64,000 nucleotides of DNA from Haliotis cracherodii (GCF_022045235.1 NW_027266341.1:54870001-54934000), one strand, 5' to 3'. Positions 10,571-57,485 are shown, counted from the stretch's first letter. A program made the numbers and translations. Notes: generated by a model from the sequence alone, not told the origin.

Positions 10571-10576
10571 ATGAAG
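10571..10576 (+). CDS. Paralog 1 coding exon 1 (Met-Lys)
   Basis: caacATGAAG|gtaaga consensus donor; same arrangement in all five paralogs. Confidence 0.88.
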
Positions 10577-11939
10577 GTAAGAGAAACATGCCTAAATCAC
10601 TTTTATCAATATCCTCTCTTTGCTTAGTATATGCTCAGGTGATTCTGGTGATATACATTGGTGATTCACGAATATTTGTCAGAAGAATATAGTCTTATAC
10701 CGTGGTTTTTAGCAATATACAGTTGTATTACGTTCACACTTTCCTTATTATTTCACCAATGTTGAGAAAGGAAAGAAAATATTTCTGGTTCCAGTCTCGT
10801 ATGCCTCATTTCCAGGTTTTAATACTCAAGGTGGGTAACTTTAGAAAGACTACTATGTAACGGCCATCATGATTGATGAAACTATAAATCATAATATGCA
10901 TTTTTCTTTAACTTGTCATGTAAGGGATAGTCACGATCCGATAAATAAGTCATAAGCATGTAAGTGCCAGGCGAATTCTGCAAATCCGCGATCGCTGAAA
11001 GTTTTGCAGAAAATGTAACTTCCCGTAGAATTGCAGTACAATCGCGGAATTTGCCTTTTTTATCGATCAATACTCTGTTTCATTATTTTCAAGCTTTTGA
11101 ATAGAATTTGGCAATCGAATGATGCCCAAACATTTAATATGCGATTCAAACATACACAATCTGAATCCTACAATAAAACAAAATTTGAAATAAATAATTC
11201 TCACTTTTAACGTTCTTGCGGTATTGTGACAACATAAACTATGATTATATGTAGCAATAACTATCAGCGGCACTATTCATATCTATTTGCATAATTATAT
11301 GTGTAAATCCTGTATAAATGTTTAACCTAGTAATTACCAACCAATTTACCCGATTGTTACATTGGAAGGTGTTTACATACACTACTCAAAGAAGTCAAAG
11401 AAGACCCGATTCTTCCATATGCATAGCATGACAGATTAACTATAGCACTATGAACGAATCACGTGTTCTATAACAGTCTCTTCTTTGAAGTAGAATAGAT
11501 ACACCTGGAAAGCACCACTAACTACATACTTCAATATAAAACTGACGACATACATGTTTATGCTTACATAATTATCTAACGATATGTTTTGTTAGTGTTC
11601 CGTTACAATAGATGTTTGACAACCCTTTTATTTGCTGCTTGTGTCGCTTTGCATCATTTGACTGAACTAAAGTCTTAGAAATTGCACTTGAGAAACTGGC
11701 GACATATTTGTCTTCTTTCGCTAATGTTTCAGTATAAGTGATATGAGACATTTATCTTGTGAGACATGAAGATATTCCCAATGATAAATGGCAGTGTCGG
11801 AATTTATGATAATAGAGAAGGGCTGGTGATTTGTAGGTGTATAATAATTGTATATAATGATATGCTATTTCTCAGTGAAACTTTCATTAAGTCACGCTTA
11901 AAGAGAATGATCTCACAACTCTCTATCTTAACAACCTCG

Positions 11940-12570
11940 GTAAGAGATCTACAAACATATTGCACACTAGATTGAGACACAATAGTAGCACACTAAATTC
12001 CGACCTGTTTCGTGTTAATTTATCTGATACTATTTCCTGTAAATCCGAAGCTCCTTGTGAAAATTCATTCCAATTCTTCTTCGAATGTACCTTATATGAT
12101 GATTTTAGGGAGACATTACTGACAGCTATCATTAATCTTTGAGGACAAAAAACTCTACATAGTATTCTTTTGGTGATCCAAACTTAGATGTATTCCTGAA
12201 TACAAAAATATTCTTGTCTGTACACAAATTTATGGAAACGACAAACAGATTCATTAGCTAGCATATTATTGTTTCCAAACTGTTAATCATTAATATTGTT
12301 AAATCTATATTCAACACTAAAATGTAGAATATTAGCATTTGTATGAGATACACACTGTCATCACTTTCCAGCACATTGTACATATCCTTCATATGAGCAC
12401 TGTGTATATATATTGCACTCTATGTTTCCACAATGTGAAGCTTCAACTGTAAATTGTTCATTTTCATTATGCAATATTGTGTATAACTGTATATAGGGAG
12501 AAGGCGATAATAAGTGCTGCACTTGTGCCCAATCCCTTTGTCTTTTTGGACAATAAAATATGTTTAATAA
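11940..12570 (+). mobile_element. 3' fragment of a CR1/L2-group LINE in the paralog 1 intron
   Basis: HTRLRHNSSTLNSDLFRVNL..C..PCENSFQFFFECTLY; ends caataaaatatgtttaa like the tails at ~9420 and ~41385. Confidence 0.7.
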
Positions 12571-12721
12571 TAATAAAACCTCGAATTAGTTATATCGCAT
12601 AAAGTCTCCACATCAGAGACAAATATTAAACATGTAAGCTCATGCTATGGAAAAAACACTTTTTAGCATTTAACACTGAGCGTTTAAGTAACACGAAAAA
12701 CAATGGAGCTATAAGAATATG

Positions 12722-12993
12722 GGCGAAACCGCATTATCAGTGGTTCATATTGGGAAAGGGAGGTCACTCTAATTTCAAACGGGAGCTATCTCCGTTGTTT
12801 TCGTATTTGCGAGTAATGGCGTCACCCACGCTGTACGTTGTTGGTCCAGCTATTAGAATGCCCATCATTTGTTTACGTAGTATATATTCTCAACAACAAG
12901 TGCGTTTAGTTTCGAATGTGGGCCCACCTCGAACTTTCGATTAGGCAAACGGAGTTAGCTTCCTTCTCGAACCACCGATAATGCGGTTTCGCC
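12722..12993. mobile_element. MITE with ~25-bp TIRs and 8-bp TSD (Merlin-like)
   Basis: TIR ggcgaaaccgcattatc(a/g)gtggttc at both ends; TSD agaatatg at 12714-12721 and 12994-13001. Confidence 0.8.
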
Positions 12994-13120
12994 AGAATAT
13001 GAACCATGTTAGGCTGCACTGATGATTTCCAAACAGTTTTCCAAATTTCCGTGTATGAGTAAATTCTTAACAACATGCTTTAAACGACGTCAGCTTCATT
13101 ATCCTTTTTGTATTTTTCAG

Positions 13121-15526
13121 TGTCTCCCCGTCGCCGTCGTCGCTCTGTGCGTCGTTGCTGTCTCCAGCATGTCCTACAACAACAACTTTGGCTCTGTCGG
13201 ACAGGTCGGCCATGTTGCCTCGGGTCTCAACGACTACGGCAAGGGGCAATATGGAGGCGCCGAGGGTCTTCGTCGTTACGGAAGCAAAAACAGCGCTGCC
13301 AATGCCAACAACAAAGCCGCCAACAACTACGCCGCCCACGGTAACAACTACCACAAGGCTGCTGATCAGGCCAGCGCTAAGGGGGACACCGCCTCCAACT
13401 ACTACGGCCACAAGAACGCTGCTCACGCTGACAAAGCCTCCGGTGCTGCCGCTCAGGCCAACAAAGCCAATTATCACGATGCTGCCGCCGCAAACTACGC
13501 CAGGAAGGACGACGCCTCCAAAGCTTCTGCCAACAACGACTACGCCAACAAAAACTACTACCGAAAGGGGAACGTCTACAACACCGGAGTCCACTACGGC
13601 TTCGACAAGAAGTACAACAAGAACGCCGATGAGGACGGTGACTACGAAATTCTTGATGACAGCAGTGCCCACAACCTCGACGAATACCGTGATAAGAACA
13701 AGGCTTACAGCACCGCCAACAGTGACCACGCCGCCAAAAAATATGCTGCTGATCGCTCCCGTGCTCTGAAAGACAGCAAGTACAGTAAAGACGCTTACAA
13801 GGCCAAATACGGTAACGGTAAATACGGCTCTGCTGCTAGTCAAGCTGCCAAGAACGGTGCTGCCAACCACGGTTATGACAGTAAACTGAACGAGGCAGCC
13901 GGAAGCAACAAGTACTATACCGACGCCCACGATGCTGCCATCAACAAACATGACGACTTCACCGGCAAGAACGCCTACTACGATAGAAAGAACGCCGCTA
14001 ATGCCGCTGCACAGGCTGCCCACAACGTTGCCGGATATGGAGGACTCGCTCATGGTGTCGCTGGTGTCGCTGGTTCTCTGGGTGTATCTGGAGTAGGATA
14101 CGGCAAGGGCTACGGTAAGCAGTACGGTCAAGGATACAACAATGGCTACCTCGGACATGACGCACACAACAACAAATACTACGATGCTGGCGCCCACGGT
14201 AAACACGCAAACTACTATGACGGTGCCTCCAATGCCGCTCTCGCCAAAACCGGAGGATACGGATCCAAACTGGGTGAATCCAGCCGAAACAAGGACGACG
14301 CTGCCTATAAGAGAACCGGCTACAACAACGCACAAGCCAACGACTACTACAAGTCTGGAGCTGCTGTTGCCAACAACAACGCCTACAGAGTCAACAAGGA
14401 TGGTGCCGCTGCCAACAACCACGGTTTCAGTCACGCCGGTGCCGACGCTGCCAGTCTCTATGACAACAAAGCCGCAGCTCACGACAATGCCAACTCTGCT
14501 TACGCCAAGGACAACTTCAGACGTAAGTACAACGAGGGTGCCAAGAAACACCATCTGGTCAAGAAGTTCCACCACCATTCTAAAGCCGACGGCAATAACT
14601 ACGAGCGTCTCAACTACGACAAGAAGGACTACAAAGACAACTTCGGCCAGAACGCCGATGCCGCTCATGCCAACGCAAAGAAATACACTCAAAAACTGTA
14701 CAAGAACGCCGCCAATGCTGCCGCCTCTAACAATGATAAGTATGCTGCCAACCACGCCAACAAAGCCTCCAACTACTACGATGCTGCTAATGCTGCCAAC
14801 GGCAACGCCGCTAAGAAATCCAACTACTACAACAAAAACTCCGCTGCCTCTGCTGGTGCTGCCAACGCTGCTGCCAAGTCTTATTATGACAACCACAACA
14901 ACGCTGCTGCTTCTAATGCCAAGAGTCTCAACGACTACTCACACAACCAGTACGGTAACAACGGCCACGCCTTCAACGCCGCCCACGGTGGTGCTGCTCA
15001 CCATGCCGGTGCCGCCCACCACGACGCTCCCAGCTACGGTTACGGCGTCGGACAAGGAATTGGAGGAGCTGGAGTTGTCGGCCTTGGTCACGGTGTTGGA
15101 AGCTTCGGTAACGGCAATGGCGTCGGCGTCGGTAGAGGAGTTGTTGGCCTTGGTCACGGTGTTGGTGGATACGGTAATGGGATCGGCGTCGGTAGAGGAG
15201 TTGTCGGCCTTGGTCACGGTGTTGGTGGATACGGTAATGGAGTCGGACACGGAATAGGAGGAGCTGGACATGGAGTTGTCGGCCTTGGTCACGGTGTTGG
15301 TGGATACGGTAATGGGATCGGCGTCGGTAGAGGAGTTGCCGGCCTTGGAAACAGTGTTGGTGGATACGGCAATGGAGTCGGACACGGAATTGGAGCAGCT
15401 GGACATGGAGTTGTCGGCCTTGGACATGGCGTTGGTGGATTCGGTAACGGAGGTGTCGGCCTTGGGAGAGGCTTTGGTGTTGGTCAAGGTTACGGAGGTT
15501 ACAACAAGTACCCATACTACGGGTAA
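13121..15526 (+). CDS. Paralog 1 exon 2: secreted Ala/Asn/Gly/Tyr/His-rich structural-type protein (803 aa spliced)
   Basis: Acceptor tatttttcag|TGT in frame with ORF 13022-15526; MK+CLPVAVVALCVVAVSS is a signal peptide; strong C-ending codon bias; four paralogs in the window. Confidence 0.93.
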   Translation, partial: CLPVAVVALCVVAVSSMSYNNNFGSVGQVGHVASGLNDYGKGQYGGAEGLRRYGSKNSAANANNKAANNYAAHGNNYHKAADQASAKGDTASNYYGHKNAAHADKASGAAAQANKANYHDAAAANYARKDDASKASANNDYANKNYYRKGNVYNTGVHYGFDKKYNKNADEDGDYEILDDSSAHNLDEYRDKNKAYSTANSDHAAKKYAADRSRALKDSKYSKDAYKAKYGNGKYGSAASQAAKNGAANHGYDSKLNEAAGSNKYYTDAHDAAINKHDDFTGKNAYYDRKNAANAAAQAAHNVAGYGGLAHGVAGVAGSLGVSGVGYGKGYGKQYGQGYNNGYLGHDAHNNKYYDAGAHGKHANYYDGASNAALAKTGGYGSKLGESSRNKDDAAYKRTGYNNAQANDYYKSGAAVANNNAYRVNKDGAAANNHGFSHAGADAASLYDNKAAAHDNANSAYAKDNFRRKYNEGAKKHHLVKKFHHHSKADGNNYERLNYDKKDYKDNFGQNADAAHANAKKYTQKLYKNAANAAASNNDKYAANHANKASNYYDAANAANGNAAKKSNYYNKNSAASAGAANAAAKSYYDNHNNAAASNAKSLNDYSHNQYGNNGHAFNAAHGGAAHHAGAAHHDAPSYGYGVGQGIGGAGVVGLGHGVGSFGNGNGVGVGRGVVGLGHGVGGYGNGIGVGRGVVGLGHGVGGYGNGVGHGIGGAGHGVVGLGHGVGGYGNGIGVGRGVAGLGNSVGGYGNGVGHGIGAAGHGVVGLGHGVGGFGNGGVGLGRGFGVGQGYGGYNKYPYYG

Positions 15527-15971
15527 ACGGTCACATGTGGTTGACTATATTGAACACCATCCTCACCTCACAAATCATGTGGCCAGTGTGCTTGATATGA
15601 ATGAAGAAGTTTGAATGCTTTTTTACCTCAAGTTTTATGTGTGTGTACCGTGTGTTTAATTGTTTTTTGTAACCAGAAAGGTACTACCACCAGATCTGAT
15701 CAGAAAAAAAGAACCAATTAGATTTTCAAAACAAAATTACATTATATTGATATGAATAAGGGTCATTCGGAACCTGTTAAGTTTTTTTCTATATTGATTG
15801 CCGAAATAATTGTTCAAACAAGGCGGTATTTAAACACATTTCAGAAGACGTAAGCCATTTCCATGTATACATGTACAATGCCTTTCGAATAGGTTGTTTT
15901 GTTACTTTGTACTTTGTACCTCGTTTTTCTGTTGTATTGTGATTTATGTCTTACTTTTACCCAATCGTAAG

Positions 15972-24920: not shown

Positions 24921-24926
24921 ATGAAG
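24921..24926 (+). CDS. Paralog 2 coding exon 1 (Met-Lys)
   Basis: caacATGAAG|gtaaga. Confidence 0.88.
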
Positions 24927-25684: not shown

Positions 25685-27850
25685 TGTCTCCCCGTCGCCG
25701 TCGTCGCTTTGTGCGTCGTTGTCGTCTCCAGCATGACCTACAACGACAACTTTGGCTCTGTCGGACAGGTCGGATACGTTGCCTCGGGTCTCAACGACTA
25801 CGGCAAAGGACAATATGAAGGTGCCGATGGTCTTCGTCGTTACGGAAGCAAAAACAGCGCCGCCAATGCCAACAACAAAGCCGCCAACAACTACGCCGCC
25901 CACGGTAACAACTACCACAAGGCTGCTGATCAGGCCAGCGCAAAGGGGGACACCGCCTCCAACTACTACGGCCACAAGAACGCTGCTCACGCTGACAAAG
26001 CCTCCGGTGCTGCCGCTCAGGCCAACAAAGCCAACTATCACGATGCTGCCGCCACAAAGTACGCCAGGAAGGACGACGCCTCCAAAGCTGCTGCCAATAA
26101 CGACTACGCCAACAACAACTACTACCGAAAGGGGAACGTCTACAACACCGGAGTCCACTACGGCTTCGACAAGAAGTACAACAAGAACGCCGATGAGGGC
26201 GGTGACTACGAAATTCTTGATGACAGCAGTGCCCACAACCTCGACGAATACCGTGATAAGAACAAGGCTTACAGCACCGCCAACAGTGACCACGCCGCCA
26301 ACAAATATGCTGCTGATCGCTCCCATGCTCTGAAAGACAGCAAGTACGGTAAAGATGCTAACAAGGCACAATACGGTAACGGTAAATACGGCTCTGCTGC
26401 TAGTCACGCTGCCAAGAACGGTGCTGCCAACAATGGGTATGCCAGTAAACTGAACGAAGCTGCTGGAAGTAACAAATACGACGACAACGCTCACAATGCC
26501 GCTATCAACAAATATGACGAGTTCACCGGCAAGAACGCCCACTACGACAGAAGGAACGCCGCTAATGCCGCTGCACAGGCTGCCCACAACGTTGCCGGAT
26601 ATGGAGGTCTCGCTCATGGTGTCGCTGGTTTCGCTGGCTCTCAAGGTCTTCTTGGCAAGGGAGTAGGATACGGCAAGGGCTACGGTAAGCAGTACGGTCA
26701 GGGATACAACAATGGTTACCTCGGACATGACGCACACAACAATAAATACTACGATGCTGGCGCCCACGGTCAACACGCAAACTACTATGACGGTGCTTCC
26801 AATGCCGCTCTCGCCAAAACCGGAGGATACGGATCCAAACTGGCTGACTCTGGCAAAAGCAAGGCCGGTGCTGCCTATAAGAGAAACGGCTACAACAACG
26901 CTCAAGCCAACGACTACTACAAGTCTGGAGCTGCTGCTGCCAACAACAACGCCTACAGAGTCAACAAGGATGGTGCCGCTGCCAACAACCACGGCTTCAG
27001 TCACGCCGGTGCCGACGCTGCCAGTCTCTATGACAACAAAGCCGCAGCTCACGACAATGCCAACTCTGCTTACGCCAAGGACAACTTCAGACGTAAGTAC
27101 AACGATGCTGCCAAGAAACACCATCTGGTCAAGAAGTTCCACCACCATTCCAACGCCGGCGGCAACAACTACGAGCGTCTCAACTACGACAAGAAGGACT
27201 ACCAGGACAACTTCGGCCAGAACGCCAATGCCGCTAATGCCAACGCAAAGAAATACACTCAAAAACTGTACAAGAACGCCGCCAATGCAGCCGCCTCTAA
27301 CAATGATAAGTCTGCTGCCAACCACGCCAACAAAGCCTCCAACTACTACGATGCTGCCAATGCTGCCAACGGCAACGGTGCTAAGAAATCAAACTACTAC
27401 AACAAAAACGCCGCTGCCTCTACTGGTGCTGCCAACGCTGCTGCCAAATCGAATTATGGTAACTACAACAACGCTGCTGCTGCCAACTTCAAGAGTCTCA
27501 ACAACTACGCCCACAGCCAGTACGGTAACAACGGCCACGCCTACAACGCCGCTCACGGTGGTGCTGCTCATCATGCCGGTGCCGCCCACCACGACGCTCC
27601 CAGCTACGGTTACGGCGTCGGACACGGAATTGGAGGAGCTGGACATGGAGTTGTCGGCCTTGGTCACGGTGTTGGTGGATACGGTAATGGGATCGGCGTC
27701 GGTAAAGGAGTTGTCGGCCTTGGAAAAGGCGTTGGTAGCTTCGGTAATGCTGCAGGCGTTATAAAGGGAGTTTCTAACCTAGGAAATGGATTTGGTGTTG
27801 TGGGAGGGTTCGGCGTCAACACCGGTATGGGGCACTATCCCTACTACTAG
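25685..27850 (+). CDS. Paralog 2 exon 2: secreted Ala/Asn/Gly/Tyr/His-rich protein (723 aa spliced)
   Basis: Acceptor gtttttcag|TGT in frame with ORF 25667-27850; signal peptide; highly similar to paralog 1 with a distinct linker and C-terminus. Confidence 0.93.
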   Translation, partial: CLPVAVVALCVVVVSSMTYNDNFGSVGQVGYVASGLNDYGKGQYEGADGLRRYGSKNSAANANNKAANNYAAHGNNYHKAADQASAKGDTASNYYGHKNAAHADKASGAAAQANKANYHDAAATKYARKDDASKAAANNDYANNNYYRKGNVYNTGVHYGFDKKYNKNADEGGDYEILDDSSAHNLDEYRDKNKAYSTANSDHAANKYAADRSHALKDSKYGKDANKAQYGNGKYGSAASHAAKNGAANNGYASKLNEAAGSNKYDDNAHNAAINKYDEFTGKNAHYDRRNAANAAAQAAHNVAGYGGLAHGVAGFAGSQGLLGKGVGYGKGYGKQYGQGYNNGYLGHDAHNNKYYDAGAHGQHANYYDGASNAALAKTGGYGSKLADSGKSKAGAAYKRNGYNNAQANDYYKSGAAAANNNAYRVNKDGAAANNHGFSHAGADAASLYDNKAAAHDNANSAYAKDNFRRKYNDAAKKHHLVKKFHHHSNAGGNNYERLNYDKKDYQDNFGQNANAANANAKKYTQKLYKNAANAAASNNDKSAANHANKASNYYDAANAANGNGAKKSNYYNKNAAASTGAANAAAKSNYGNYNNAAAANFKSLNNYAHSQYGNNGHAYNAAHGGAAHHAGAAHHDAPSYGYGVGHGIGGAGHGVVGLGHGVGGYGNGIGVGKGVVGLGKGVGSFGNAAGVIKGVSNLGNGFGVVGGFGVNTGMGHYPYY

Positions 27851-33442: not shown

Positions 33443-35605
33443 TTACCCGTAGTAAGAGTACTGGTTATAACCTCCAAAGCCTTGACCAACACCAAAGCCT
33501 CTTCCAAGGCCGACAACTCCTCTACCGACGCCGACGCCATTACCGTTACCGAAGCCGCCAACACCGTGACCAAGACCGACAACTCCTTTACCGACGCCAT
33601 TACCGTATCCACCAACACCGTGACCAAGACCGACAACTCCATGTCCAACTCCTCCAATTCCGTGTCCGACGCCGTAACCGTAGCTAGGAGCGCCGTGGTG
33701 GGCGGCACCGGCATGGTGAGCAGCACCACCGTGAGCGGCGTTGTAGGCGTGGCCGGTGTTACCGTACTGTTTGTTGGAGTAGTCGTTGAGACTCTTGGCA
33801 TTTGTAGCAGCAGCGTTGTTGTGGTTGTCATAATAAGATTTGGCAGCAGCGTTGGCAGCACCAGCAGAGGCAGCGGCGTTTTTGTTGTAGTAGTTGGATT
33901 TCTTAGCACCGTTGCCGTTGGCAGCATTAGCAGCATCGTAGTAGTTGGAGGCTTTGTTGGCGTGGTTGGCAGCATATTTGTCATTGTCATGGGCAGCAGC
34001 ATTGGCGGCGTTCTGGTAGAGATTCTGGGTTGTTTTCTTGGTGTTGGCATGAGCGGCATTGGCGTTCTGTCCGAAGTTGTCCTGGTAGTCCTTCTTGTCG
34101 TAGTTGAGACGCTCGTAGTTGTTGCCGCCGGCGTTGGAATGATGGTGGAACTTCTTGACCAGATGGTGTTTCTTGGCAGCATCGTTGTACTTACGTCTGA
34201 AGTTGTCCTTGGCGAAAGCAGAGTTGGCATTGTCGTGAGCTGCGGCTTTGTTGTCATAGAGACTGGCAGCGTCAGCACCGGCGTGACTGAAGCCGTGGTT
34301 GTTGGCAGCGGCACCGTCCTTGTTGACTCTGTAGGCGTTGTTGTTGGCAGCAGCAGCTCCAGACTTGTAGTAGTCGTTGGCATGAGCGTTGTTGTAGCCG
34401 TTTCTCTTATAGGCAGCGTCGGCCTTGTTTCTGCTAGACTCACCCAGTTTGGATCCGTATCCTCCGGTTTTGGCGAGAGCGGCATTGGCAGCACCGTCAT
34501 AGTAGTTTGCATGTTGACCTTGGGCGCCAGCATCGTAGTATTTGTTGTTGTGTGCGTCATGTCCGAGGTAACCATTGTTGTATCCCTGGCCATACTGCTT
34601 ACCGTAGCCCTTACCGTATCCTACTCCAGATACACCCAGAGAACCAGCGACACCACCGACACCGTGGCCACCATGAGCGAGACCTCCATATCCGGCAACG
34701 TTGTGGGCAGCCTGTGCAGCGGCATTAGCAGCGTTCCTGCTGTCGTAGTAGGCGTTCCTGCCGGCGAACTCATCATGTTTGTTGATGGCAGCATCGTGAG
34801 CGTTGGCGGAGTATTTGTTGCTTCCGGCTGCTTCGTTCAGTTTGCTGTCGTAGCCGTGGTTGGCAGCACCGTTCTTGGCAGCTTGACTAACAGCAGAGCC
34901 GTATTTACCGTTACCGTATTGAGCCTTGTAAGCGCCTTTACCGTACTTGCTGTCTTTCAGAGCATGGGAGCGATCAGCAGCATACTTGTTGGCGGCGTGG
35001 TCACTGTTGGCGGTGCTGTAAGCCTTGTTCTTATCTTCATATTCGTCGAGGTTGTGGGCGCTGCTGTCATCAAGAATTTCGTAGTCCCCGCCCTCATCGG
35101 CGTTCTTGTTGTACTTCTTGTCGAAGCCGTAGTGGACTCCGGTGTTGAAGACGTTCCCCTTTCGGTAGTAGTTGTTGTTGGCGTAGTCGTTGTTGGCAGC
35201 AGCTTTGGAGGCGGCGTCCTTTCTGGCGTAGTTTGCGGCGGCAGCATCGTGGTAGTTGGCTTTGTTGGCCTGAGCGGCTGCACCGGTAGCTTTGTCAGCG
35301 TGAGCAGCGTTCTTGTGGCCGTAGTAGTTGGAGGCGGTGTCCCCCTTAGCGCTGGCCTGATCAGCAGCTTTGTGGTAGTTGTTACCGTGGGCGGCGTAGT
35401 TGTTGGCGGCTTTGTTGTTGGCATTGGCGGCGCTGTTTTTGCTGCCGTAACGACGAAGACCCTCGGCGCCTTCATATTGCCCTTTGCCGTAGTCGTTGAG
35501 ACCCGAGGCAACGTGGCCGACCTGTCCGACAGAGCCAAAGTTGTTGTTGAAGGACATGCTGGAGACGACAACGACGCACAAAGCGACGACGGCGACGGGG
35601 AGACA
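33443..35605 (-). CDS. Paralog 3 exon 2: secreted Ala/Asn/Gly/Tyr/His-rich protein (722 aa spliced)
   Basis: Acceptor gtgttttttcag|TGT in frame with ORF 33443-35749; the ORF's poly-Leu start is an intronic (CTA)n run. Confidence 0.93.
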   Translation of the reverse strand, partial: CLPVAVVALCVVVVSSMSFNNNFGSVGQVGHVASGLNDYGKGQYEGAEGLRRYGSKNSAANANNKAANNYAAHGNNYHKAADQASAKGDTASNYYGHKNAAHADKATGAAAQANKANYHDAAAANYARKDAASKAAANNDYANNNYYRKGNVFNTGVHYGFDKKYNKNADEGGDYEILDDSSAHNLDEYEDKNKAYSTANSDHAANKYAADRSHALKDSKYGKGAYKAQYGNGKYGSAVSQAAKNGAANHGYDSKLNEAAGSNKYSANAHDAAINKHDEFAGRNAYYDSRNAANAAAQAAHNVAGYGGLAHGGHGVGGVAGSLGVSGVGYGKGYGKQYGQGYNNGYLGHDAHNNKYYDAGAQGQHANYYDGAANAALAKTGGYGSKLGESSRNKADAAYKRNGYNNAHANDYYKSGAAAANNNAYRVNKDGAAANNHGFSHAGADAASLYDNKAAAHDNANSAFAKDNFRRKYNDAAKKHHLVKKFHHHSNAGGNNYERLNYDKKDYQDNFGQNANAAHANTKKTTQNLYQNAANAAAHDNDKYAANHANKASNYYDAANAANGNGAKKSNYYNKNAAASAGAANAAAKSYYDNHNNAAATNAKSLNDYSNKQYGNTGHAYNAAHGGAAHHAGAAHHGAPSYGYGVGHGIGGVGHGVVGLGHGVGGYGNGVGKGVVGLGHGVGGFGNGNGVGVGRGVVGLGRGFGVGQGFGGYNQYSYYG

Positions 35606-35631: not shown

Positions 35632-35639
35632 GTAGTAGC

Positions 35640-36847: not shown

Positions 36848-37317
36848 NNNNNNNNNNNNNNNNNNNNNNNNNNNNNNNNNNNNNNNNNNNNNNNNNNNNN
36901 NNNNNNNNNNNNNNNNNNNNNNNNNNNNNNNNNNNNNNNNNNNNNNNNNNNNNNNNNNNNNNNNNNNNNNNNNNNNNNNNNNNNNNNNNNNNNNNNNNNN
37001 NNNNNNNNNNNNNNNNNNNNNNNNNNNNNNNNNNNNNNNNNNNNNNNNNNNNNNNNNNNNNNNNNNNNNNNNNNNNNNNNNNNNNNNNNNNNNNNNNNNN
37101 NNNNNNNNNNNNNNNNNNNNNNNNNNNNNNNNNNNNNNNNNNNNNNNNNNNNNNNNNNNNNNNNNNNNNNNNNNNNNNNNNNNNNNNNNNNNNNNNNNNN
37201 NNNNNNNNNNNNNNNNNNNNNNNNNNNNNNNNNNNNNNNNNNNNNNNNNNNNNNNNNNNNNNNNNNNNNNNNNNNNNNNNNNNNNNNNNNNNNNNNNNNN
37301 NNNNNNNNNNNNNNNNN
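36848..37317. other. Assembly gap
   Basis: Run of N. Confidence 1.
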
Positions 37318-43198: not shown

Positions 43199-45442
43199 TT
43201 ACCCGTAGTAAGAGTACTGGTTATAACCTCCAAAGCCTTGACCAACACCAAAGCCTCTACCAAGGCCGACAACTCCGTTACCGACGCCGACGCCATTGCC
43301 GTTACCGAAGCCACCAACACCGTGACCAAGACCGACAACTCCATGTCCAGCTCCTCCAATTCCGTGTCCGACTCCATTACCGTATCCACCAACACCGTTT
43401 CCAAGGCCGACAACTCCTTTACCGACGCCGATCCCATTACCGTATCCACCAACACCGTGACCAAGACCGACAACTCCACGTCCAACTCCTCCAATTCCGT
43501 GTCCGACGCCGTAACCGTAGCTGGGAGCGTCGTGGTGGGCGGCACCGGCATGGTGAGCAGCACCACCGAGAGCGGCGTTGTAGGCGTGGCCGTTGTTACC
43601 GTACTGGTTGTGTGAGTAGTCGTTGAGACTCTTGGCATTAGAAGCAGCAGCGTTGTTGTGGTTGTCATAATAAGACTTGGCAGCAGCGTTGGCAGCACCA
43701 GCAGAGGCAGCGGCGTTTTTGTTGTAGTAGTTGGATTTCTTAGCGGCGTTGCCGTTGGCAGCATTAGCAGCATCGTAGTAGTTGGAGGCTTTGTTGGCGT
43801 GGTTGGCAGCATATTTGTCGTTGTCATGGGCGGCAGCATTGGCGGCGTTCTGGTAGAGGTTCTGGGTTATTTTCTTAGTGTTGGCATGAGCGGCATTGGC
43901 GTTCTGTCCGAAGTTGTCCTTGTAGTCCTTCTTGTCGTAGTTGAGACGCTCGTAGTTGTTGCCGCCGGCGTTGGAATGATGGTGGAACTTCTTGACCAGA
44001 TGGTGTTTCTTGGCAGCATCGTTGTACTTACGTCTGAAGTTGTCCTTGGCGTAAGCAGAGTTGGCATTGTCGTGAGCTGCGGCTTTGTTGTCATAGAGAC
44101 TGGCGGCGTCAGCACCGGCGTGACTGAAGCCGTGGTTGTTGGCAGCGGCACCATCCTTGTTGTATCTGTAGGCGTTGTTGTTGGCAGCAGCAGCTCCAGA
44201 CTTGTAGTAGTCGTTGGCATGTGCGTTGTTGTAGCCGTTTCTCTTATAGGTAGCGTCGGCCTTGTTTCTGCTAGACTCACCCAGTTTGGATCCGTATCCT
44301 CCGGTTTTGGCGAGAGCGGCATTGGCAGCACCGTCATAGTAGTTTGCATGTTGACCTTGGGCGCCAGCATCGTAGTATTTGTTGTTGTGTGCGTCATGTC
44401 CGAGGTAGCCATTGTTGTATCCCTGGCCATACTGCTTACCGTAGCCCTTGCCGTATCCTACTCCAGATACACCCAGAGAACCAGCGACACCACCGACACC
44501 GTGGCCACCATGAGCGAGACCTCCATATCCGGCAACGTTGTGGGCAGCCTGTGCAGCGGCATTAGCGGCGTTCCTTCTGTCGTAGTAGGCGTTCCTGCCG
44601 GTGAAGTCGTCATGTTTGTTGATGGCAGCATCGTGAGCGTTGGCGGAGTATTTGTTGCTTCCGGCTGCTTCGTTCAGTTTACTGTCGTAGCCGTGGTTGG
44701 CAGCACCGTTCTTGGCAGCTTGACTAGCAGCAGAGCCGTATTTCCCGTTACCGTATTGAGCCTTGTAAGCGCCTTTACCGTACTTGCTGTCTTTCAGAGC
44801 ATGGGAGCGATCAGCAGCATACTTGTTGGCGGCGTGGTCACTGTTGGCGGTGCTGTAAGCCTTGTTCTTATCTTCATATTCGTCGAGGTTGTGGGCACTG
44901 CTGTCATCAAGAATTTCGTAGTCCCCGTCCTCATCGGCGTTCTTGTTGTACTTCTTATCGAAGCCGTAGTGGACTCCGGTGTTGAAGACGTTCCCCTTTC
45001 GGTAGTAGTTGTTGTTGGCGTAGTCGTTGTTGGCAGCAGATTTGGAGGCGGCGTCCTTTCTGGCGTAGTTTGCGGCGGCAGCATCGTGGTAGTTGGCTTT
45101 ATTGGCCTGAGCGGCAGCACCAGAAGCTTTGTCAGCGTGAGCAGCGTTCTTGTGGCCGTAGGAGTTGGAGGCAGTGTCCCCCTTAGCGCTGGCCTGATCA
45201 GCAGCTTTGTGGTAGTTGTTACCGTGGGCGGCGTAGTTGTTGGCGGCTTTGTTGTAGGCATTGACAGCGCTGTTTTTGCTGCCGTAACGACGAAGACCCT
45301 CTGCGCCTCCATATTGCCCTTTGCCGTAGTCGTTGAGACCCGAGGCAACGTGGCCGACCTGTCCGACAGAGCCAAAGTTGTTGTTGTAGGTCATGCTGGA
45401 GACGACAACGACGCACAAAGCGACGACGGCGACGGGGAGACA
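43199..45442 (-). CDS. Paralog 4 exon 2: secreted Ala/Asn/Gly/Tyr/His-rich protein (749 aa spliced)
   Basis: Acceptor gtgttttttcag|TGT in frame with ORF 43199-45454; signal peptide; tandem duplicate of paralog 3. Confidence 0.93.
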   Translation of the reverse strand, partial: CLPVAVVALCVVVVSSMTYNNNFGSVGQVGHVASGLNDYGKGQYGGAEGLRRYGSKNSAVNAYNKAANNYAAHGNNYHKAADQASAKGDTASNSYGHKNAAHADKASGAAAQANKANYHDAAAANYARKDAASKSAANNDYANNNYYRKGNVFNTGVHYGFDKKYNKNADEDGDYEILDDSSAHNLDEYEDKNKAYSTANSDHAANKYAADRSHALKDSKYGKGAYKAQYGNGKYGSAASQAAKNGAANHGYDSKLNEAAGSNKYSANAHDAAINKHDDFTGRNAYYDRRNAANAAAQAAHNVAGYGGLAHGGHGVGGVAGSLGVSGVGYGKGYGKQYGQGYNNGYLGHDAHNNKYYDAGAQGQHANYYDGAANAALAKTGGYGSKLGESSRNKADATYKRNGYNNAHANDYYKSGAAAANNNAYRYNKDGAAANNHGFSHAGADAASLYDNKAAAHDNANSAYAKDNFRRKYNDAAKKHHLVKKFHHHSNAGGNNYERLNYDKKDYKDNFGQNANAAHANTKKITQNLYQNAANAAAHDNDKYAANHANKASNYYDAANAANGNAAKKSNYYNKNAAASAGAANAAAKSYYDNHNNAAASNAKSLNDYSHNQYGNNGHAYNAALGGAAHHAGAAHHDAPSYGYGVGHGIGGVGRGVVGLGHGVGGYGNGIGVGKGVVGLGNGVGGYGNGVGHGIGGAGHGVVGLGHGVGGFGNGNGVGVGNGVVGLGRGFGVGQGFGGYNQYSYYG

Positions 45443-46375: not shown

Positions 46376-47159
46376 AGAGGGACAGTGCATACATATTCAT
46401 ACACATTGGCCTTTAATGACAGGTTAGTAATAACCATTAACTGTTTCAGTATATCGCCGTATGTCATTAGAGTCGATAAGGTAGAGTTGATGGCGTTATC
46501 CACACAGGTACAAATTACGTTATAACATTATTCTGATTCTTGTGTGAAATCATTTTCTTTTTTTGATAGGTATTCGACGAAATATGCACTGTAACATTAA
46601 GAAACTATATAACATGTTCAATTTTTATTGCACGGTAGGTTTGCTTTCTTTGAATTGGTATTTTTTCTTCAAAATAGAGAGTGAATAAATACAATACTCT
46701 TTTCATATTCAAAAACATCTGCTAAAAGCAGATTTTATTGTACCATTCCGACCATTTTATGAGCTAGCTCTTTGTCGATATAAAAGTTATTTCACAGTTA
46801 TGACATTTTTGTAATAACTGAAACCCACCAATATCAATGTATTATATCAGTTTAAACAATTTCGGTAACAATCTATTTATATACGTGCATTATATCGATT
46901 GTGTAGTATCGCCTTATTTCCTGTCAAATAGTTTGTTCAAATCGATATCGGTTATCAGTAACTATCAGTAGAACTTTACACGTTGAAATGACATTTTGTC
47001 TGAAATGAATATGTGCCTTGTGGAATGGGTGTACCATGGAGTGTCATAACAGGAGTTGGTTTTACACCGATATTGACGAACACGTTGGGAAGTATCGGCA
47101 CACGACATTTACCCCATGTAACACTGGTATGTTACCCTTAGTCAGGTTTATATACTCAT

Positions 47160-47899: not shown

Positions 47900-48065
47900 N
47901 NNNNNNNNNNNNNNNNNNNNNNNNNNNNNNNNNNNNNNNNNNNNNNNNNNNNNNNNNNNNNNNNNNNNNNNNNNNNNNNNNNNNNNNNNNNNNNNNNNNN
48001 NNNNNNNNNNNNNNNNNNNNNNNNNNNNNNNNNNNNNNNNNNNNNNNNNNNNNNNNNNNNNNNNN
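47900..48065. other. Assembly gap
   Basis: Run of N. Confidence 1.
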
Positions 48066-54270: not shown

Positions 54271-54276
54271 ATGAAG
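54271..54276 (+). CDS. Paralog 5 coding exon 1 (Met-Lys)
   Basis: caagATGAAG|gtaaga; TATA-like TTTAAAA at 54195-54201. Confidence 0.82.
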
Positions 54277-55358
54277 GTAAGATGCAGTTGAACTGTCTTG
54301 CTTCTTATTTCAGTTGTTCGTGTAGTGTCTAGGTTATCAGGACTCAATTGTAACTATTTCCAATACATACTTTAGGAAACTGCCGTAGTATGAAGTTGGC
54401 TTCTGCTGTTTAATGTCGCAGATTCATTGTATCAAGGTTTTCCTATTCTAAACATAGAGCCGTTACGCTACATACATGTAAAAAGGCTAAATTAACTCGT
54501 TCGTTCATATGTTCAACTACCTTCGTTTTTCCGTAAAAAAAAAACTACAACCCCTTTTCCACAAATCCATCTTGTGAGTTAAGTGTGTTTGTTTAAACAA
54601 TGTACTCTCTCTTAACCAGTATTTGTGTCATCCGATGATTTGTTAATTCTAAAACCTTTCTTCCTTTGTAAGCATACACCTTCACTACTTCGGATTAAAC
54701 CAACTTCAATACTGACAATCATTATATAATATCGTATTTTATTATATACTTCAGTGTGAAATACTGACTTTTCCGAAGTTGAGAAAAGTGATATTTTCAT
54801 TGTAGTGAACATAATACTTGATATTTCACTGCTGTTAACAAAGCACTTTGACGAAACCATTGTCATACAAAAGTTACCTCCCCTCAAATTGTATCCCTTT
54901 AGCGTGAGGGCGGTGAACCGTCCCTGTGTGTTAGGTAGGGAGAATTAACGTTTCAAGGTTATACATTCGTAATGAAAAAATAATAATTATCCGATAGATA
55001 ACTACAAAAAAGCATATTATAAATAGGATATTCCATGTGTCTCGTGAAATATCATATTTCCTCTCATCTCGTGACGGGGAAAAAGGAGAAATTTTAACTC
55101 GCTGAAATATCCTCATTTTATTTAACCAAAACTTTCGAATTTTTAAAACGTTTATTTCAATATCGGACGCTGTTCCCATATGTTCTAGCCTTGTCAACGT
55201 TCTCTTGATGTAAGTGATGACGAAATAGGCATAGGCATGTTTTGTGAACGTTATACCTGAATGTCAAAATTGTAGTTTAACGTTTTGAACCTTTGAGAAG
55301 CCGCTTAACAGATATCCAGAGTTGTCGTGTGTGTATCCTCATTATTTACTGTTTTCAG

Positions 55359-57485
55359 TGTCTCTCTCTTGCCGTCATCGCCATCTGTGTGGCTGCTGCC
55401 ACATGCGACTACTTCGACAACTATGGCGCCGCCGCCAACAACGGCCACCTGTCAGCCGGCGTGAACAACTACGGGAAGGGACAGTACGCCAACCAGAACA
55501 CTGACCACAAATACAACAGATACGACAACGCCGCTAACACCTACAACAAAGCCGCCAACAACTACGCCAACCACGGCAACCACTACTACAAAGCAGCTGA
55601 TCAGGCCGGCGTCAAGGGAGACGCTGCCTCCAACTACTACGGCAACAAGGCTGCCGCCCACGCCAATAACGCTTACGGCGATGCCGCCCACAACAACAAA
55701 GCCAACTACCACGACGCCGCCGCCAAACACTACGCCAGGAAAGACAACGCCGCCAGAGCTGCTGCTAACAACAACCACGCCAATAACAACTACTACAACA
55801 AGGGTGACGTCTTCAACACCGGCGTCAACTACGGCTTCGACAAGAAATACAACAAGAACTCAAACGAGGATGGCGACTATGAAGTCCTTGACACAAGCAG
55901 CGCTCACAACCTCGCCGACTACCGTGACCACAGTGGAGCCGCCAACTACGCCAACCGCGAGCACGCCAACAAGAAATACGCCGCCGATGCCGCACACGCT
56001 CTGAAGGACAGTAAGTACGGACATGGCGCTGCCGCAAATCAATACGGAAACGGTAAATATGGCGCCGCCACCAGCCACGCTGCCAACAACGGTGCTGCCA
56101 ACCACGCCACCGCTGCCAAATTAAACGAAGCTGCTGGAAGCAACAAATACTATGACAACGCTCATGACGCTTCTAAAGATCAGTACGACAACTTCGCTAA
56201 CAAGAATGCCTTCTACGACAGAAAAAACGCTGCTAACGCCGCCGCACAGGCCGCTCACAACCTCGCCGGCCACGGCACCCACGGAGTCTACGGAACTCAC
56301 GGATTCTCAGGAGTCGGAGGCGTCGGAGGCGTCGGTAAAGGAAACGGCTACGGTAACGGCTACGGTCATGGTAACGGCTACGGTCAGCAATACGGTCAGC
56401 AATATGGTCAGCATGGTCAACAATACGGTCAGCAGGGACATGGTCTGTACGATAACGCCGCTCAAGGTCAGCACTCCAACCATTATGATTCAGCCGCCAA
56501 TGCTGCCAATGTTAGAAATGGTAAATATGGATCTCACCTGAATGACTACCAGAGAAACAATGCCGGAGCTGCCTACCACAAGAACGGCTACAACAACGCC
56601 CAGGCCAACGACTACTACAAATCCGGTGCTGCTGCTGACAAGAACAACGCCTACAGGTCCAACACCGACGCTGCAGCTTCCGACAGACACGGATACGACC
56701 ACGCCGGTGCCGATGCTGCCAGCCTTTATAATGCCAAAGCTGCTGCAACCGACAGTGTCAACTCTGCCTACGCCAAGGACAACTTCAGACGTAATTACAA
56801 CGATGCTGCCAAGAAACACCATCTGGTCAAGAAGTTCCACCACCACAACAACGCCGGCGGCAACAACTACGAACGCCTCAACTACAACAGAAAGGACTAC
56901 AAGGATAACTTCGCCCAGAACGCCAACGCTGCACACTCTAATGCCAACAAGTACTCTCAGAACTATTACAACGACGCTGCCAACGCAGCAGCCCACAACA
57001 ACGACAAATATGCCGCCAACAACGCTGACAACGCCTACAAATACAATGACGTCGCTCAGGCCGCCAACGGCAACGCTGCTAAGAAATCGAACTACTACAA
57101 CCAGAATGCTGCCAATGCTGCCGGAGCTAACAATAATGCCGCTGCTTCTAAATACAACGACTACAACAATGCTGCTGCTGCTCGCGCCAACGTCCTCAAC
57201 GACTATGCCCACAACAATTACGGATCCAATGCCCGTGCCCACAGTAACTCTCACGGCGCTGCTACCAACAACGCCGCCGCCGCTCAACACGGTACCCCCT
57301 ATAGCAACGGCTACGGTGTCGGACATGGAGTTGGTGTCGGTCACGGAGTTGGTGTCGGACATGGAGTTGGTGTCGGAAACGGTGTCGGAGGGTTCGGAGT
57401 TGGAAATGGCGTCGTGGGCGTTGGATTCGGCCGTGGCCTTGCTGGTGGTTTCGGAGGCGCCAAGGGCGGCTACCAGTACTATTAG
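55359..57485 (+). CDS. Paralog 5 exon 2: most divergent secreted Ala/Asn/Gly/Tyr/His-rich protein (710 aa spliced)
   Basis: Acceptor gttttcag|TGT in frame with ORF 55293-57485; MKCLSLAVIAICVAAATC signal peptide; same core motifs; QQYG linker and GVGH tail. Confidence 0.93.
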   Translation, partial: CLSLAVIAICVAAATCDYFDNYGAAANNGHLSAGVNNYGKGQYANQNTDHKYNRYDNAANTYNKAANNYANHGNHYYKAADQAGVKGDAASNYYGNKAAAHANNAYGDAAHNNKANYHDAAAKHYARKDNAARAAANNNHANNNYYNKGDVFNTGVNYGFDKKYNKNSNEDGDYEVLDTSSAHNLADYRDHSGAANYANREHANKKYAADAAHALKDSKYGHGAAANQYGNGKYGAATSHAANNGAANHATAAKLNEAAGSNKYYDNAHDASKDQYDNFANKNAFYDRKNAANAAAQAAHNLAGHGTHGVYGTHGFSGVGGVGGVGKGNGYGNGYGHGNGYGQQYGQQYGQHGQQYGQQGHGLYDNAAQGQHSNHYDSAANAANVRNGKYGSHLNDYQRNNAGAAYHKNGYNNAQANDYYKSGAAADKNNAYRSNTDAAASDRHGYDHAGADAASLYNAKAAATDSVNSAYAKDNFRRNYNDAAKKHHLVKKFHHHNNAGGNNYERLNYNRKDYKDNFAQNANAAHSNANKYSQNYYNDAANAAAHNNDKYAANNADNAYKYNDVAQAANGNAAKKSNYYNQNAANAAGANNNAAASKYNDYNNAAAARANVLNDYAHNNYGSNARAHSNSHGAATNNAAAAQHGTPYSNGYGVGHGVGVGHGVGVGHGVGVGNGVGGFGVGNGVVGVGFGRGLAGGFGGAKGGYQYY

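What the first reader, a model, noticed from the sequence alone, without database searches (positions are those of the whole stretch)
10571..57485. Five-gene cluster of an unrecognised secreted Ala/Asn/Gly/Tyr/His-rich protein family (candidate biomaterial system)
Seen: five intact paralogs with identical gene structure, signal peptides, no Cys or Trp in the mature chain, Pro confined to the ends, abundant Tyr and His, and Tyr-rich C-termini (KYPYYG, HYPYY, QYSYYG, YQYY). Codon usage is strongly C-ending in an AT-rich genome. Established: Tyr/His/Gly-rich secreted proteins in molluscs build sclerotised or adhesive materials through DOPA, dityrosine and His-catechol cross-links. Inference: a dosage-amplified structural family for a secreted material (radula, jaw, periostracum/operculum, mucus or egg coat). 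The tissue cannot be read from sequence.
Basis: partly seen in the sequence, partly recalled or inferred. Interest (0 to 1): 0.8.

Follow-up and report, generated by a model that had tools for sequence, protein, structure and literature searches.

The report
Gastropod-only secreted helical structural protein genes
This stretch of the black abalone genome carries five (six counting one just outside) intact, transcribed copies of a gene for a large secreted alanine/asparagine/glycine/tyrosine/histidine-rich protein that belongs to an undescribed family found only in snails, probably a building block of a hardened extracellular material whose identity (my best guess: the operculum) is still untested.

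Summary
Five intact exon-2 reading frames of 708-801 codons lie at the stated places. They have no Trp, Cys only in the leader, 1-2 Pro, Tyr 9-10%, His 5-6%, Tyr-rich ends and C-ending codons. A 2-codon first exon (ATGAAG|gt) is readable for g1, g2 and g5 but not for g3 and g4. Both assembly gaps lie upstream of g3 and g4, outside every reading frame. A sixth copy sits 1.3 kb past the window, and two distant paralogs lie 1.3 Mb away.

The genome is Haliotis cracherodii. The paralogs are under purifying selection (dN/dS 0.2-0.36). RNA-type runs of two related species cover exon 2 heavily but not the intron.

A profile search of 1.84 billion proteins found 44 clusters. Every credibly named one is a gastropod and none is characterised. 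No pulmonate, bivalve or cephalopod was seen.

The family shares two length-conserved helix/beta-hairpin/helix modules (YGFDKKF..EDGxY; KKF..GGNNYERLNYD) joined and flanked by Gly/Tyr segments. The Tyr/His richness and GHGVGGYGNG tail are lineage-specific.

It is not GAAP, not a major shell-matrix protein, and does not fit radular-tooth composition. A structural, cross-linked role is likely. The tissue is inferred only. This scan had noted related abalone gene complexes elsewhere on this chromosome.

The parts
10524..10531 (+). TATA box (TATATAAG) of g1
   Evidence: lies in a 275-nt promoter/exon-1 block that is 86% identical to g2 (24700-24971)
10571..10576 (+). g1 exon 1 coding part: ATG AAG (Met-Lys), followed by gtaag donor
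   Evidence: an 871-nt contig of run X17 ends at 13119 with 29 further letters that do not lie on the intron, as expected of a spliced first exon (inferred)
13121..15526 (+). g1 exon 2 with stop: 801 codons; rest of signal peptide, two helical modules, long GHGVGGYGNG tail, ends KYPYYG
   Evidence: RNA-type contigs cover it
24921..24926 (+). g2 exon 1 coding part (ATGAAG|gtaag)
25685..27850 (+). g2 exon 2 with stop: 721 codons, ends HYPYY
33443..35605 (-). g3 exon 2 with stop: 720 codons, ends QYSYYG; first exon not found in readable sequence
   Evidence: its 3'UTR equals 30/30 a loose end of an RNA-type contig in run X16; a public record of this protein starts at Met17, i.e. without a first exon
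36848..37317 (.). assembly gap 1.2 kb upstream of g3 exon 2 (intron or promoter side); not inside any reading frame
   Evidence: the stretch of g4 that corresponds to it (46464-46915) holds no first exon
43199..45442 (-). g4 exon 2 with stop: 747 codons, ends QYSYYG; first exon not found in readable sequence
   Evidence: dS 0.07 and dN/dS 0.26 against g3
47900..48065 (.). assembly gap 2.5 kb upstream of g4 exon 2, at a distance like the g1 intron (2544 nt); may hide g4 exon 1
   Evidence: inference only
54271..54276 (+). g5 exon 1 coding part (ATGAAG|gtaag)
   Evidence: the same exon is 1023 nt upstream of g6 exon 2 in L001
55359..57485 (+). g5 exon 2 with stop: 708 codons, ends YQYY; older subtype (63% identical to g1)
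13574..13663 (+). g1 conserved motif 1 (about residues 152-181 of exon 2: ..VHYGFDKKYNKNADEDGDYEILD..), predicted beta-hairpin at the tip of module 1
   Evidence: invariant columns Y159 G160 F161 D162 K163 K164 E171 G173 across ten diverse members; strands E152-165 and E171-180 in the g3 model; coordinates approximate
14552..14638 (+). g1 conserved motif 2 (..HLVKKFHHHS.A.GNNYERLNYDKKDY..), predicted beta-hairpin at the tip of module 2
   Evidence: invariant K484 G494 N496 E498 R499 L500; strands E481-490 and E496-509 in the g3 model; coordinates approximate

Best explanation
The locus is a tandem array of six two-exon genes in Haliotis cracherodii, five in the window and one just outside.

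Gene product. Exon 1 gives Met-Lys. Exon 2 gives the rest of a signal peptide and a 70-80 kDa mature chain.

Family. The genes are the abalone expansion of the 'A-type' branch of an undescribed protein family restricted to gastropods. Every member has the same plan:
1. A signal peptide.
2. A short Gly/aromatic stretch.
3. Module 1: a helix of about 100 residues, a beta-hairpin carrying YGFDKKF..EDGxY, then a helix of about 120 residues.
4. A Gly/Tyr linker.
5. Module 2: helix, a beta-hairpin carrying KKF..GGNNYERLNYD, helix.
6. A Gly/Tyr tail ending in an aromatic residue.
There is no Cys and almost no Pro.

Inferred mechanism. The two Ala-rich helical hairpins form rigid rods of fixed length that pack side by side in an extracellular sheet or fibre. 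The flexible Gly/Tyr (in abalone Gly/Tyr/His) ends and linker are the sites where oxidative cross-linking makes the material insoluble. The six copies and the C-ending codons serve burst synthesis.

Which material (least certain step). About 35-40% for the operculum, which in abalone is larval, or a similar larval tanned sheet. This rests on the family's distribution, which matches lineages that have an operculum at some stage, and on its abundance in plankton metatranscriptomes.

Shown: gene models for g1, g2 and g5; intact frames; purifying selection; transcription in related abalones; family limits; conserved architecture.
Inferred: secretion, rod assembly, cross-linking, tissue.
For: Gene models and selection
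- Intact frames and shared acceptor.
- The Met-Lys first exon with a TATA box.
- The same 2-codon exon in g6 and in paralog d2. The RefSeq model XP_071088974.1 of d2 starts MKAVYATL, which is exactly that splice.
- dN/dS 0.20-0.36 for all pairs; C3 0.50-0.58.

Transcription
- RNA-type runs X15 and X16 (one related species) and X17 (another) cover exon 2 at summed contig depths from tens to tens of thousands. The intron is covered only at repeats.
- A run of the same species (X22) has none, which points to expression limited to some tissue or stage.
- A g3-type 3'UTR is present in X16.

Family limits
- 44 clusters among 1.84 billion representatives.
- Named members are Haliotis, Lottia (two adjacent genes), Patella, Gigantopelta, Elysia, Plakobranchus, Nucella (five, three of them adjacent), Batillaria, Pomacea, Babylonia and Littorina.
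- One 993-nt contig filed under Enterococcus faecium is taken as contamination.
- Several mRNA-length contigs come from Tara and JGI environmental assemblies.
- No pulmonate and no non-gastropod mollusc was seen.

Architecture
- Alignments run without indels through both helical regions at 25% identity, with invariant motif columns.
- AlphaFold2 with 42 sequences gives four long helices at pLDDT 60-72 and both motifs as beta-hairpins.
- The best structural neighbours are long antiparallel helical hairpins.

Material
- The Buccinum operculum is a tyrosine-cross-linked scleroprotein (cited in PMC10305591).
- No Ala/Asn/Gly-rich entry is among the 77 major adult abalone shell-matrix proteins (PMC6003135).
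- Mature radular teeth of a related vetigastropod are Gly 82%, His 10%, Pro 5% (PMC4658332).
Against:
- Adult abalone and limpets have no operculum, yet abalone keeps eight intact genes.
- The absence from pulmonates rests on database names. 12 short hits were not looked up, and unannotated genes would be missed.
- The structure model is of low to middling confidence (mean pLDDT 52).
- No clean heptad or hendecad periodicity was found, so coiled-coil packing is not shown.
- The first exon of g3 and g4 is not in the readable sequence.
- Cross-linking chemistry is untested. His richness is not a family trait.
Confidence: 0.62

Rival explanations
1. Feeding-apparatus protein. The family builds part of the radula (membrane, tooth bases or the early scaffold), the jaws or the buccal cuticle, working together with the Gly/His-rich proteins encoded 1.3-1.4 Mb away on the same chromosome.
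For: The abalone copies carry a GHGVGGYGNG tail and 5-6% His. That is the chemistry of the neighbouring Gly/His/Tyr gene arrays, which share the 2-codon first exon (earlier notes s1-826215 and s1-826216; the d2 exon was confirmed). Those arrays fit the Gly 82%, His 10% composition of vetigastropod radular teeth (PMC4658332). The radula is made throughout life, which would explain amplification and codon bias better than a transient larval organ. Sea slugs without an adult shell or operculum keep the family.
Against: Ala, Asx, Tyr and Lys together make up under 3% of maturing and mature Megathura teeth, so this family cannot be their bulk. Pulmonates, chitons, cephalopods and other radula-bearing molluscs show no member. 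The His-rich tail is lineage-specific, not a family trait.
Confidence: 0.22
2. Periostracum or larval-shell framework protein secreted by the mantle edge or shell field, like the Gly/Tyr-rich, Tyr-terminated shematrin-type proteins.
For: The chain ends in Tyr, as shematrins and Has-tsfgr1 do (PMC2034539). Shell proteomes are made after bleaching, which removes the periostracum, so absence there does not exclude it. Plankton metatranscriptomes hold many members, and veligers grow shell. The family is kept by sacoglossans, which have larval shells.
Against: Shelled pulmonates show no member. Bivalves and other shelled molluscs have none. No Ala/Asn/Gly-rich protein is among the major abalone shell proteins. 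There are no acidic or chitin-binding domains.
Confidence: 0.12
3. A soluble, largely disordered secreted protein, not a load-bearing solid. Examples would be a mucus, adhesive or protective hydrophilic protein that becomes helical only on surfaces or on drying, like LEA-type proteins or the Ala-rich flounder antifreeze.
For: AlphaFold confidence is low. The composition is hydrophilic and Ala/Asn/Lys/Asp-rich. The top structural neighbour is the Ala-rich helical-hairpin antifreeze Maxi, 4ke2, with Z 10.7 and 195 of its 196 residues aligned.
Against: That Z value lies within the range the tool gives for unrelated helical models. There is no LEA or other Pfam match. Helix lengths and the two motifs are strictly conserved across gastropods, which speaks for a defined fold and assembly. 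The family occurs in tropical, freshwater and deep-sea vent snails, so antifreeze is not plausible.
Confidence: 0.08

Closest known systems
Histidine-rich sclerotised proteins (squid beak HBPs, Nereis jaw Nvjp-1, suckerins); named from my own knowledge of the field, not from a tool
   Same: Secreted and Cys-poor, with Gly/His/Tyr repeats (GHGVGGYGNG in the abalone tail). A presumed role in a hardened, cross-linked extracellular material.
   Different: Only the last 80-160 residues resemble them, and only in composition. About 85% of the chain is Ala/Asn-rich predicted helix with two conserved beta-hairpin motifs. No cephalopod or annelid relative was found. His richness is absent from most family members.
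Shematrin / KRMP / Has-tsfgr1 type Gly/Tyr-rich shell-framework proteins (PMC2034539)
   Same: Signal peptide, Gly/Tyr-rich low-complexity segments, a chain ending in Tyr, and multi-copy gene families.
   Different: Those are small or wholly Gly-rich proteins without long helical modules. No sequence relation was detected, and no bivalve hit appears.
GAAP_HALAI (glycine-, alanine- and asparagine-rich shell protein of Haliotis)
   Same: An abalone protein, secreted, rich in Gly, Ala and Asn.
   Different: GAAP is built of [GN]n and GGSGGSGFG repeats and is expressed for nacre (PMC4944945). The present proteins have neither repeat and were not seen among the major shell proteins.
Ala-rich helical structural proteins (hymenopteran coiled-coil silks, whelk egg-capsule proteins) and the Ala-rich helical hairpin antifreeze Maxi (PDB 4ke2)
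   Same: Long Ala-rich helices predicted to pair antiparallel, flanked by flexible ends. Maxi is the top structural neighbour (Z 10.7, rmsd 4.5, 195 of its 196 residues aligned).
   Different: No significant heptad or 11-residue periodicity. No sequence relation. Beta-hairpin tips and the two-module plan are not features of those proteins. Abalone and limpets spawn freely and lay no egg capsules.

Membership tests
The undescribed gastropod family itself (Lottia LOTGIDRAFT_238000 / Elysia RRG08_037751 type) | Motif 1 [YFW]GFDKK[FY]..E.G and motif 2 KKF..GG.N.ERLNY at fixed positions, full-length colinear alignment | tested here: met
   Invariant columns in alignments A1-A3. Profile E-values run from 1e-245 to 1e-30 for full-length members.
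The undescribed gastropod family itself | Met-Lys first exon followed by one large exon | tested here: met
   Found for g1, g2, g5, g6 and d2. Many members from other snails start MK plus a hydrophobic leader. Not verifiable for g3 and g4.
Squid-beak HBP / Nvjp-1 type His-rich proteins | Chain dominated by Gly/His repeats (GHGxY and the like) over most of its length | tested here: not met
   Gly 13-18% and His 5-6% overall. The repeats are confined to the C-terminal tail.
Squid-beak HBP / Nvjp-1 type His-rich proteins | Sequence relatives in cephalopods or annelids | tested here: not met
   Every credibly named hit of the exhaustive profile search is a gastropod; the one exception is a contaminant contig.
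GAAP_HALAI | [GN]n and GGSGGSGFG repeats (PMC4944945) | tested here: not met
   Neither repeat occurs in the five translations.
Coiled-coil silk / egg-capsule proteins | Heptad (3.5-residue) apolar periodicity along the helices | tested here: inconclusive
   In the family profile, power at 3.5 is raised in helices 1 and 2 but does not exceed shuffles (31-116 of 500 shuffles reach the observed maximum). It is absent in helices 3 and 4.
LEA group 3 / other known low-complexity Pfam families | Match to the curated profile | tested here: not met
   No Pfam family at E <= 1 except a chance P67 hit far below its cut-off.
Abalone adult shell matrix proteins | Listed among proteins extracted from nacre or the prismatic layer | tested here: inconclusive
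   No Ala/Asn/Gly-flagged entry is among the 77 major H. laevigata proteins. Minor proteins and the supplementary lists were not checked by sequence.
Operculum scleroprotein (functional class) | Expression in the opercular disc and presence in the operculum | not testable with these tools
   Only indirect evidence: the taxon distribution and a tyrosine cross-linked Buccinum operculum cited in PMC10305591.

The most novel reading that the evidence does not exclude
The family is the main structural protein of the gastropod operculum. It would be a gastropod-only invention as old as the class, kept for the larval operculum even in abalone, limpets and sea slugs, lost in pulmonates, and amplified in abalone for a burst of synthesis in a few larval cells. 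It would be the first molecular handle on the operculum, and a new type of fibrous protein: two fixed-length Ala-rich helical hairpins tipped by beta-hairpins, with cross-linkable Gly/Tyr ends.
Probability: 0.33. Interest if true: 0.75.

Novelty: new variant of a known kind. Interest (0 to 1): 0.6.

Why it matters
Secreted low-complexity structural proteins of molluscs usually evolve too fast to be traced beyond a genus. That is why the makers of non-shell hard parts (operculum, jaws, radular membrane, periostracum) are almost unknown.

This family can be aligned end to end, without indels in its helical parts, from limpets and abalone to whelks, apple snails and sea slugs. It occurs in no other animal searched. 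It is transcribed very heavily in some samples.

That makes it a clade-defining structural gene with a testable tissue assignment, and a candidate biomaterial with a modular design of rigid Ala-rich rods plus cross-linkable ends.

It also ties this window to the larger abalone 'structural-protein complex' 1.3 Mb away. At least one component of that complex is now shown to be ancient rather than abalone-only.

Tried and rejected
1. A profile-profile comparison gave E 0.13 and probability below 1%, close to a reversed control. Both modules are predicted as helix/beta-hairpin/helix, but common descent is not shown.
2. Coiled-coil or 11-residue periodicity. Not significant.
3. Fold search. Foldseek against PDB found nothing. 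VIA-align gave only generic long helical hairpins in the noise range for helical models.
4. The first AlphaFold run, with 10 sequences, was unusable at pLDDT 33.
5. The ESM Atlas gave no usable neighbour for g3 or for the Elysia member.
6. Looking for the first exon of g3 and g4. Pattern and BLAST searches with the g1, g2 and g5 promoters found none. The stretch of g4 that corresponds to the g3 gap holds none.
7. Literature. Accession and motif searches found no paper on any member. Searches on the radula, the scaly-foot scleritome and the limpet tooth gave nothing on this family.
9. Run and organism names from the look-up of sequencing runs are coded, so tissue and stage could not be read.
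10. The careful tree search did not finish. The quick tree (SH-aLRT only) is reported.
11. The spliced protein (Met-Lys joined to exon 2) was never typed or searched. All searches used exon 2 alone.

Full report
**What is in the window**

Each starts, after an intronic read-through, at the same acceptor ttttcag|TGTCTC. Exon 2 spans:
- g1 13121-15526 (+)
- g2 25685-27850 (+)
- g3 35605-33443 (-)
- g4 45442-43199 (-)
- g5 55359-57485 (+)

The same 2-codon exon stands at 24921 (g2) and 54271 (g5). The protein therefore begins Met-Lys and continues CLPVAVVALCVVVVSS, a plain signal peptide. I read this from the sequence, as no predictor was available.

The composition claims all hold:
- Ala 18-21%, Gly 13-18%, Asn 12-17%, Tyr 9-10%, His 5-6%.
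- No Trp.
- Cys only in the leader.
- One or two Pro, at the start of the Gly-rich tail and in the YPYY end.
- Third-position C is 0.50-0.58, in a window whose non-coding parts are 32-40% GC.

**The gaps**

The N runs are at 36848-37317 and 47900-48065. Neither lies inside a reading frame. They sit 1.2 kb upstream of g3 exon 2 and 2.5 kb upstream of g4 exon 2.

For these two genes I could not find the first exon or a g1/g2-like promoter in any readable part of the window. The stretch of g4 that corresponds to the g3 gap has no such exon. The g4 gap lies at a distance like the g1 intron, so it may hide the g4 exon.

Three observations suggest g3 and g4 are live genes:
- dN/dS between g3 and g4 is 0.26 at dS 0.07.
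- The g3 3'UTR matches 30 of 30 letters of a loose end of an RNA-type contig in run X16.
- A public record holds the g3 protein from Met17 on, which is what an annotator produces when exon 1 is missing from the assembly.

**More copies**

A search of the window's own genome finds a sixth intact copy 1.3 kb past the window end (C78:54935356-54937476, minus strand, g5-like). It has its own ATGAAG|gt exon 1023 nt upstream of its exon 2.

Two distant paralogs, d1 and d2, lie at 56.24 Mb on the same chromosome. They are 30-34% identical over the full length. They sit inside the 'secreted structural-protein gene complex' that this scan had noted before (s1-826215).

d2 is RefSeq XP_071088974.1, 'sericin 1-like [Haliotis cracherodii]'. 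It lies on a contig of 61,937,186 nt, the length of the window's contig. This fixes the species. Its annotated N-terminus MKAVYATL is exactly the Met-Lys splice that I infer.

**Real genes, transcribed**

All paralog pairs have dN/dS of 0.20-0.36 over dS from 0.04 to 1.2.

I laid four RNA-type runs on 10400-15700:
- Runs from two related species (X15 and X16; X17) cover exon 2 in many contigs, at summed depths from tens to tens of thousands.
- The intron is touched only at repeats.
- One 871-nt contig stops at the acceptor with 29 further letters that do not lie on the intron, as a spliced first exon would. This is an inference, because the letters were not shown.
- A run labelled with the window's own species (X22) has nothing on exon 2.

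So expression is heavy but restricted. Run, organism and sample names are coded, so I could not read the tissue or stage.

**Relatives**

- Pfam gives nothing and PDB sequences give nothing.
- The word-based search found Lottia LOTGIDRAFT_238000 and an environmental protein. With a profile it also found Elysia crispata RRG08_037751.
- The exhaustive profile search of 1.84 billion representatives found only 44 clusters.
- Every credibly named member is a gastropod: Haliotis cracherodii and H. rufescens, Lottia (238000 and 238001, neighbours), Patella, Gigantopelta, Elysia, Plakobranchus, Nucella (five, with 028225-028227 adjacent), Batillaria, Pomacea, Babylonia and Littorina.
- The one exception, a 993-nt contig filed under Enterococcus faecium, I take to be contamination.
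- The names given by sources (sericin-1-like, filaggrin-2-like, fibroin heavy chain-like, PE-PGRS-like) reflect composition only.
- Several members are mRNA-length contigs from Tara Oceans and JGI environmental assemblies. I take these to be planktonic larvae or pteropods, which is an inference.
- I saw no pulmonate (Biomphalaria, Lymnaea, Physella, land snails) and no bivalve, cephalopod or chiton. Twelve short hits could not be looked up, so pulmonate absence is likely but not proven.
- No paper mentions any of the accessions or motifs.

**Family history**

A quick maximum-likelihood tree (SH-aLRT support only; the careful search did not finish; composition is heterogeneous) shows two old branches:
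- The B-type branch holds d1 and d2, Lottia 238001, Nucella 028225 and 028226, Pomacea and Plakobranchus_b.
- The A-type sequences hold g1-g6 with Gigantopelta and Lottia 238000. The Elysia, Littorina, Batillaria and Nucella 028227 types are their likely counterparts in the other large gastropod group.

A-type and B-type genes are neighbours in Lottia and Nucella. An ancestral tandem pair is therefore likely. The six-copy array is an abalone-lineage expansion.

**Architecture**

Sequences at 25% identity align without a single indel through two regions of about 270 residues each. Invariant columns are concentrated in two motifs:
- YGFDKK(F/Y)..E.G.Y
- KKF..GG(N/D)N.ERLNY

AlphaFold2 with 10 sequences was useless (pLDDT 33). 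With 42 sequences it gave mean pLDDT 52, with the helices at 60-72:
- four long helices (47-145, 186-305, 364-476, 513-625);
- each conserved motif as a beta-hairpin between two helices;
- a linker (306-363) and a tail (626-720) without structure.

Foldseek finds no PDB match. VIA-align returns long antiparallel helical hairpins, led by the Ala-rich flounder antifreeze Maxi (Z 10.7), SMC arms and chemoreceptors. The tool itself warns that such scores are common for helical models.

Two further tests were negative:
- Profile-profile comparison does not show that the two modules are homologous (E 0.13).
- Apolar periodicity is not significant.

The plan 'two helix/beta-hairpin/helix rods joined and flanked by Gly/Tyr segments' is thus supported at the secondary-structure level. 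Its packing is inferred.

**What is lineage-specific**

In the helical parts, abalone Tyr/Phe columns are aromatic in 32-38% of other taxa, against 1-7% for other residue types. Eight positions are aromatic in at least 60% of other taxa, often as Trp in sea slugs.

However, 17 of 39 Tyr positions and nearly all His positions are not shared. Tyr 7-10% with His 5-10% is seen only in abalone A-type copies, Lottia 238000 and Gigantopelta. The GHGVGGYGNG tail is abalone-specific.

It is not the family's defining property.

**Which material**

Three lines narrow the field:
1. Not GAAP, which has [GN]n and GGSGGSGFG repeats (PMC4944945).
2. Not among the 77 major nacre and prismatic-layer proteins of H. 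laevigata, judged by the paper's composition flags (PMC6003135).
3. Not the bulk of radular teeth. In the vetigastropod Megathura, maturing and mature teeth are Gly 81-82%, His 10%, Pro 5%, with all other residues together about 2% (PMC4658332). That composition fits the neighbouring Gly/His gene arrays better than this family.

The family's distribution covers all major gastropod groups that have an operculum at least as larvae, including freshwater Pomacea. It does not include pulmonates or other molluscs. This matches the operculum, a gastropod-only tanned protein plate. The Buccinum operculum is cited as a bromotyrosine cross-linked scleroprotein (PMC10305591).

The environmental transcripts, and the all-or-nothing pattern among abalone RNA runs, fit a larval product.

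Against this reading, abalone keeps eight intact genes for an organ it sheds at settlement, whereas a radula-associated role would explain lifelong heavy demand.

My estimates are:
- operculum or a similar larval tanned sheet: 35-40%
- radula, jaw or buccal cuticle: about 22%
- periostracum or larval shell: about 12%
- a soluble or other role: the rest

**Verdict**

The genes encode a secreted, probably structural protein of an undescribed, gastropod-restricted family with a distinctive conserved plan. The tissue and the cross-linking chemistry remain to be tested.

- One call each of the reads tools was available, and their labels were coded.
- The spliced Met-Lys plus exon 2 sequence was never joined or searched. 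All searches used exon 2 alone.

Noticed in passing
L001 1353-3527 (-), = C78:54935356-54937476, 1.3 kb beyond the window end: A sixth intact copy (g6, 708 codons, dS 0.04 to g5) lies tail-to-tail with g5. Its ATGAAG|gt first exon is 1023 nt upstream of its exon 2. The array is therefore six genes, not five.
   Followed up: yes
L002 3425-5827 (+) and L003 3254-5851 (+), C78 at 56.24 Mb: Two older paralogs (d1, d2; 30-34% identical; Phe-rich rather than Tyr-rich; long Gly/Ser/His tails) have the same two motifs and the same 2-codon first exon. They link this window to the structural-protein gene complex 1.3 Mb away.
   Followed up: partly
window 37965-39550 (+): Two ORFs (202 and 261 aa) look like the reverse transcriptase of a LINE-type retroelement, by eye only. 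They are inserted upstream of g3, next to the first gap.
   Followed up: no
window 35606-35740 (-): A long (TAC/CTG-type) microsatellite lies in the intron immediately upstream of the g3 acceptor and reads as poly-Leu or poly-Tyr in the ORF list. A shorter version precedes g4. It explains the spurious N-terminal extension of the g3 ORF.
   Followed up: no
window 9087-9310, with copies at 40872-40939 and 48066-48137: A palindromic short repeat (91% self-complementary over 228 nt), possibly MITE-like. One copy abuts the second assembly gap.
   Followed up: no
window 520-825 and 3597-4058 (+): Tandem repeats read as ORFs (HNVVLGQHQRSEV units; YHYTLYTIVNAMS units). These are probably satellites, not genes.
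   Followed up: no
protein P0016 (WP_334412533.1): A 318-aa partial 'Enterococcus faecium' hypothetical protein on a 993-nt contig belongs to this gastropod family (E 2e-57). It is almost certainly snail DNA contaminating a bacterial assembly.
   Followed up: partly
C78 56.2-56.4 Mb (earlier notes s1-826216, s1-841701): Mature radular teeth of the vetigastropod Megathura are Gly 82%, His 10%, Pro 5% (PMC4658332). That matches the small Gly/His(/Tyr) proteins encoded by the neighbouring arrays far better than it matches this family. It is a lead for those findings.
   Followed up: no
Lottia LOTGIDRAFT_238000/238001; Nucella ACOMHN_028225-028227: A-type and B-type members are adjacent genes in a limpet and a whelk. 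This suggests an ancestral tandem pair that has been pulled 1.3 Mb apart in abalone.
   Followed up: partly
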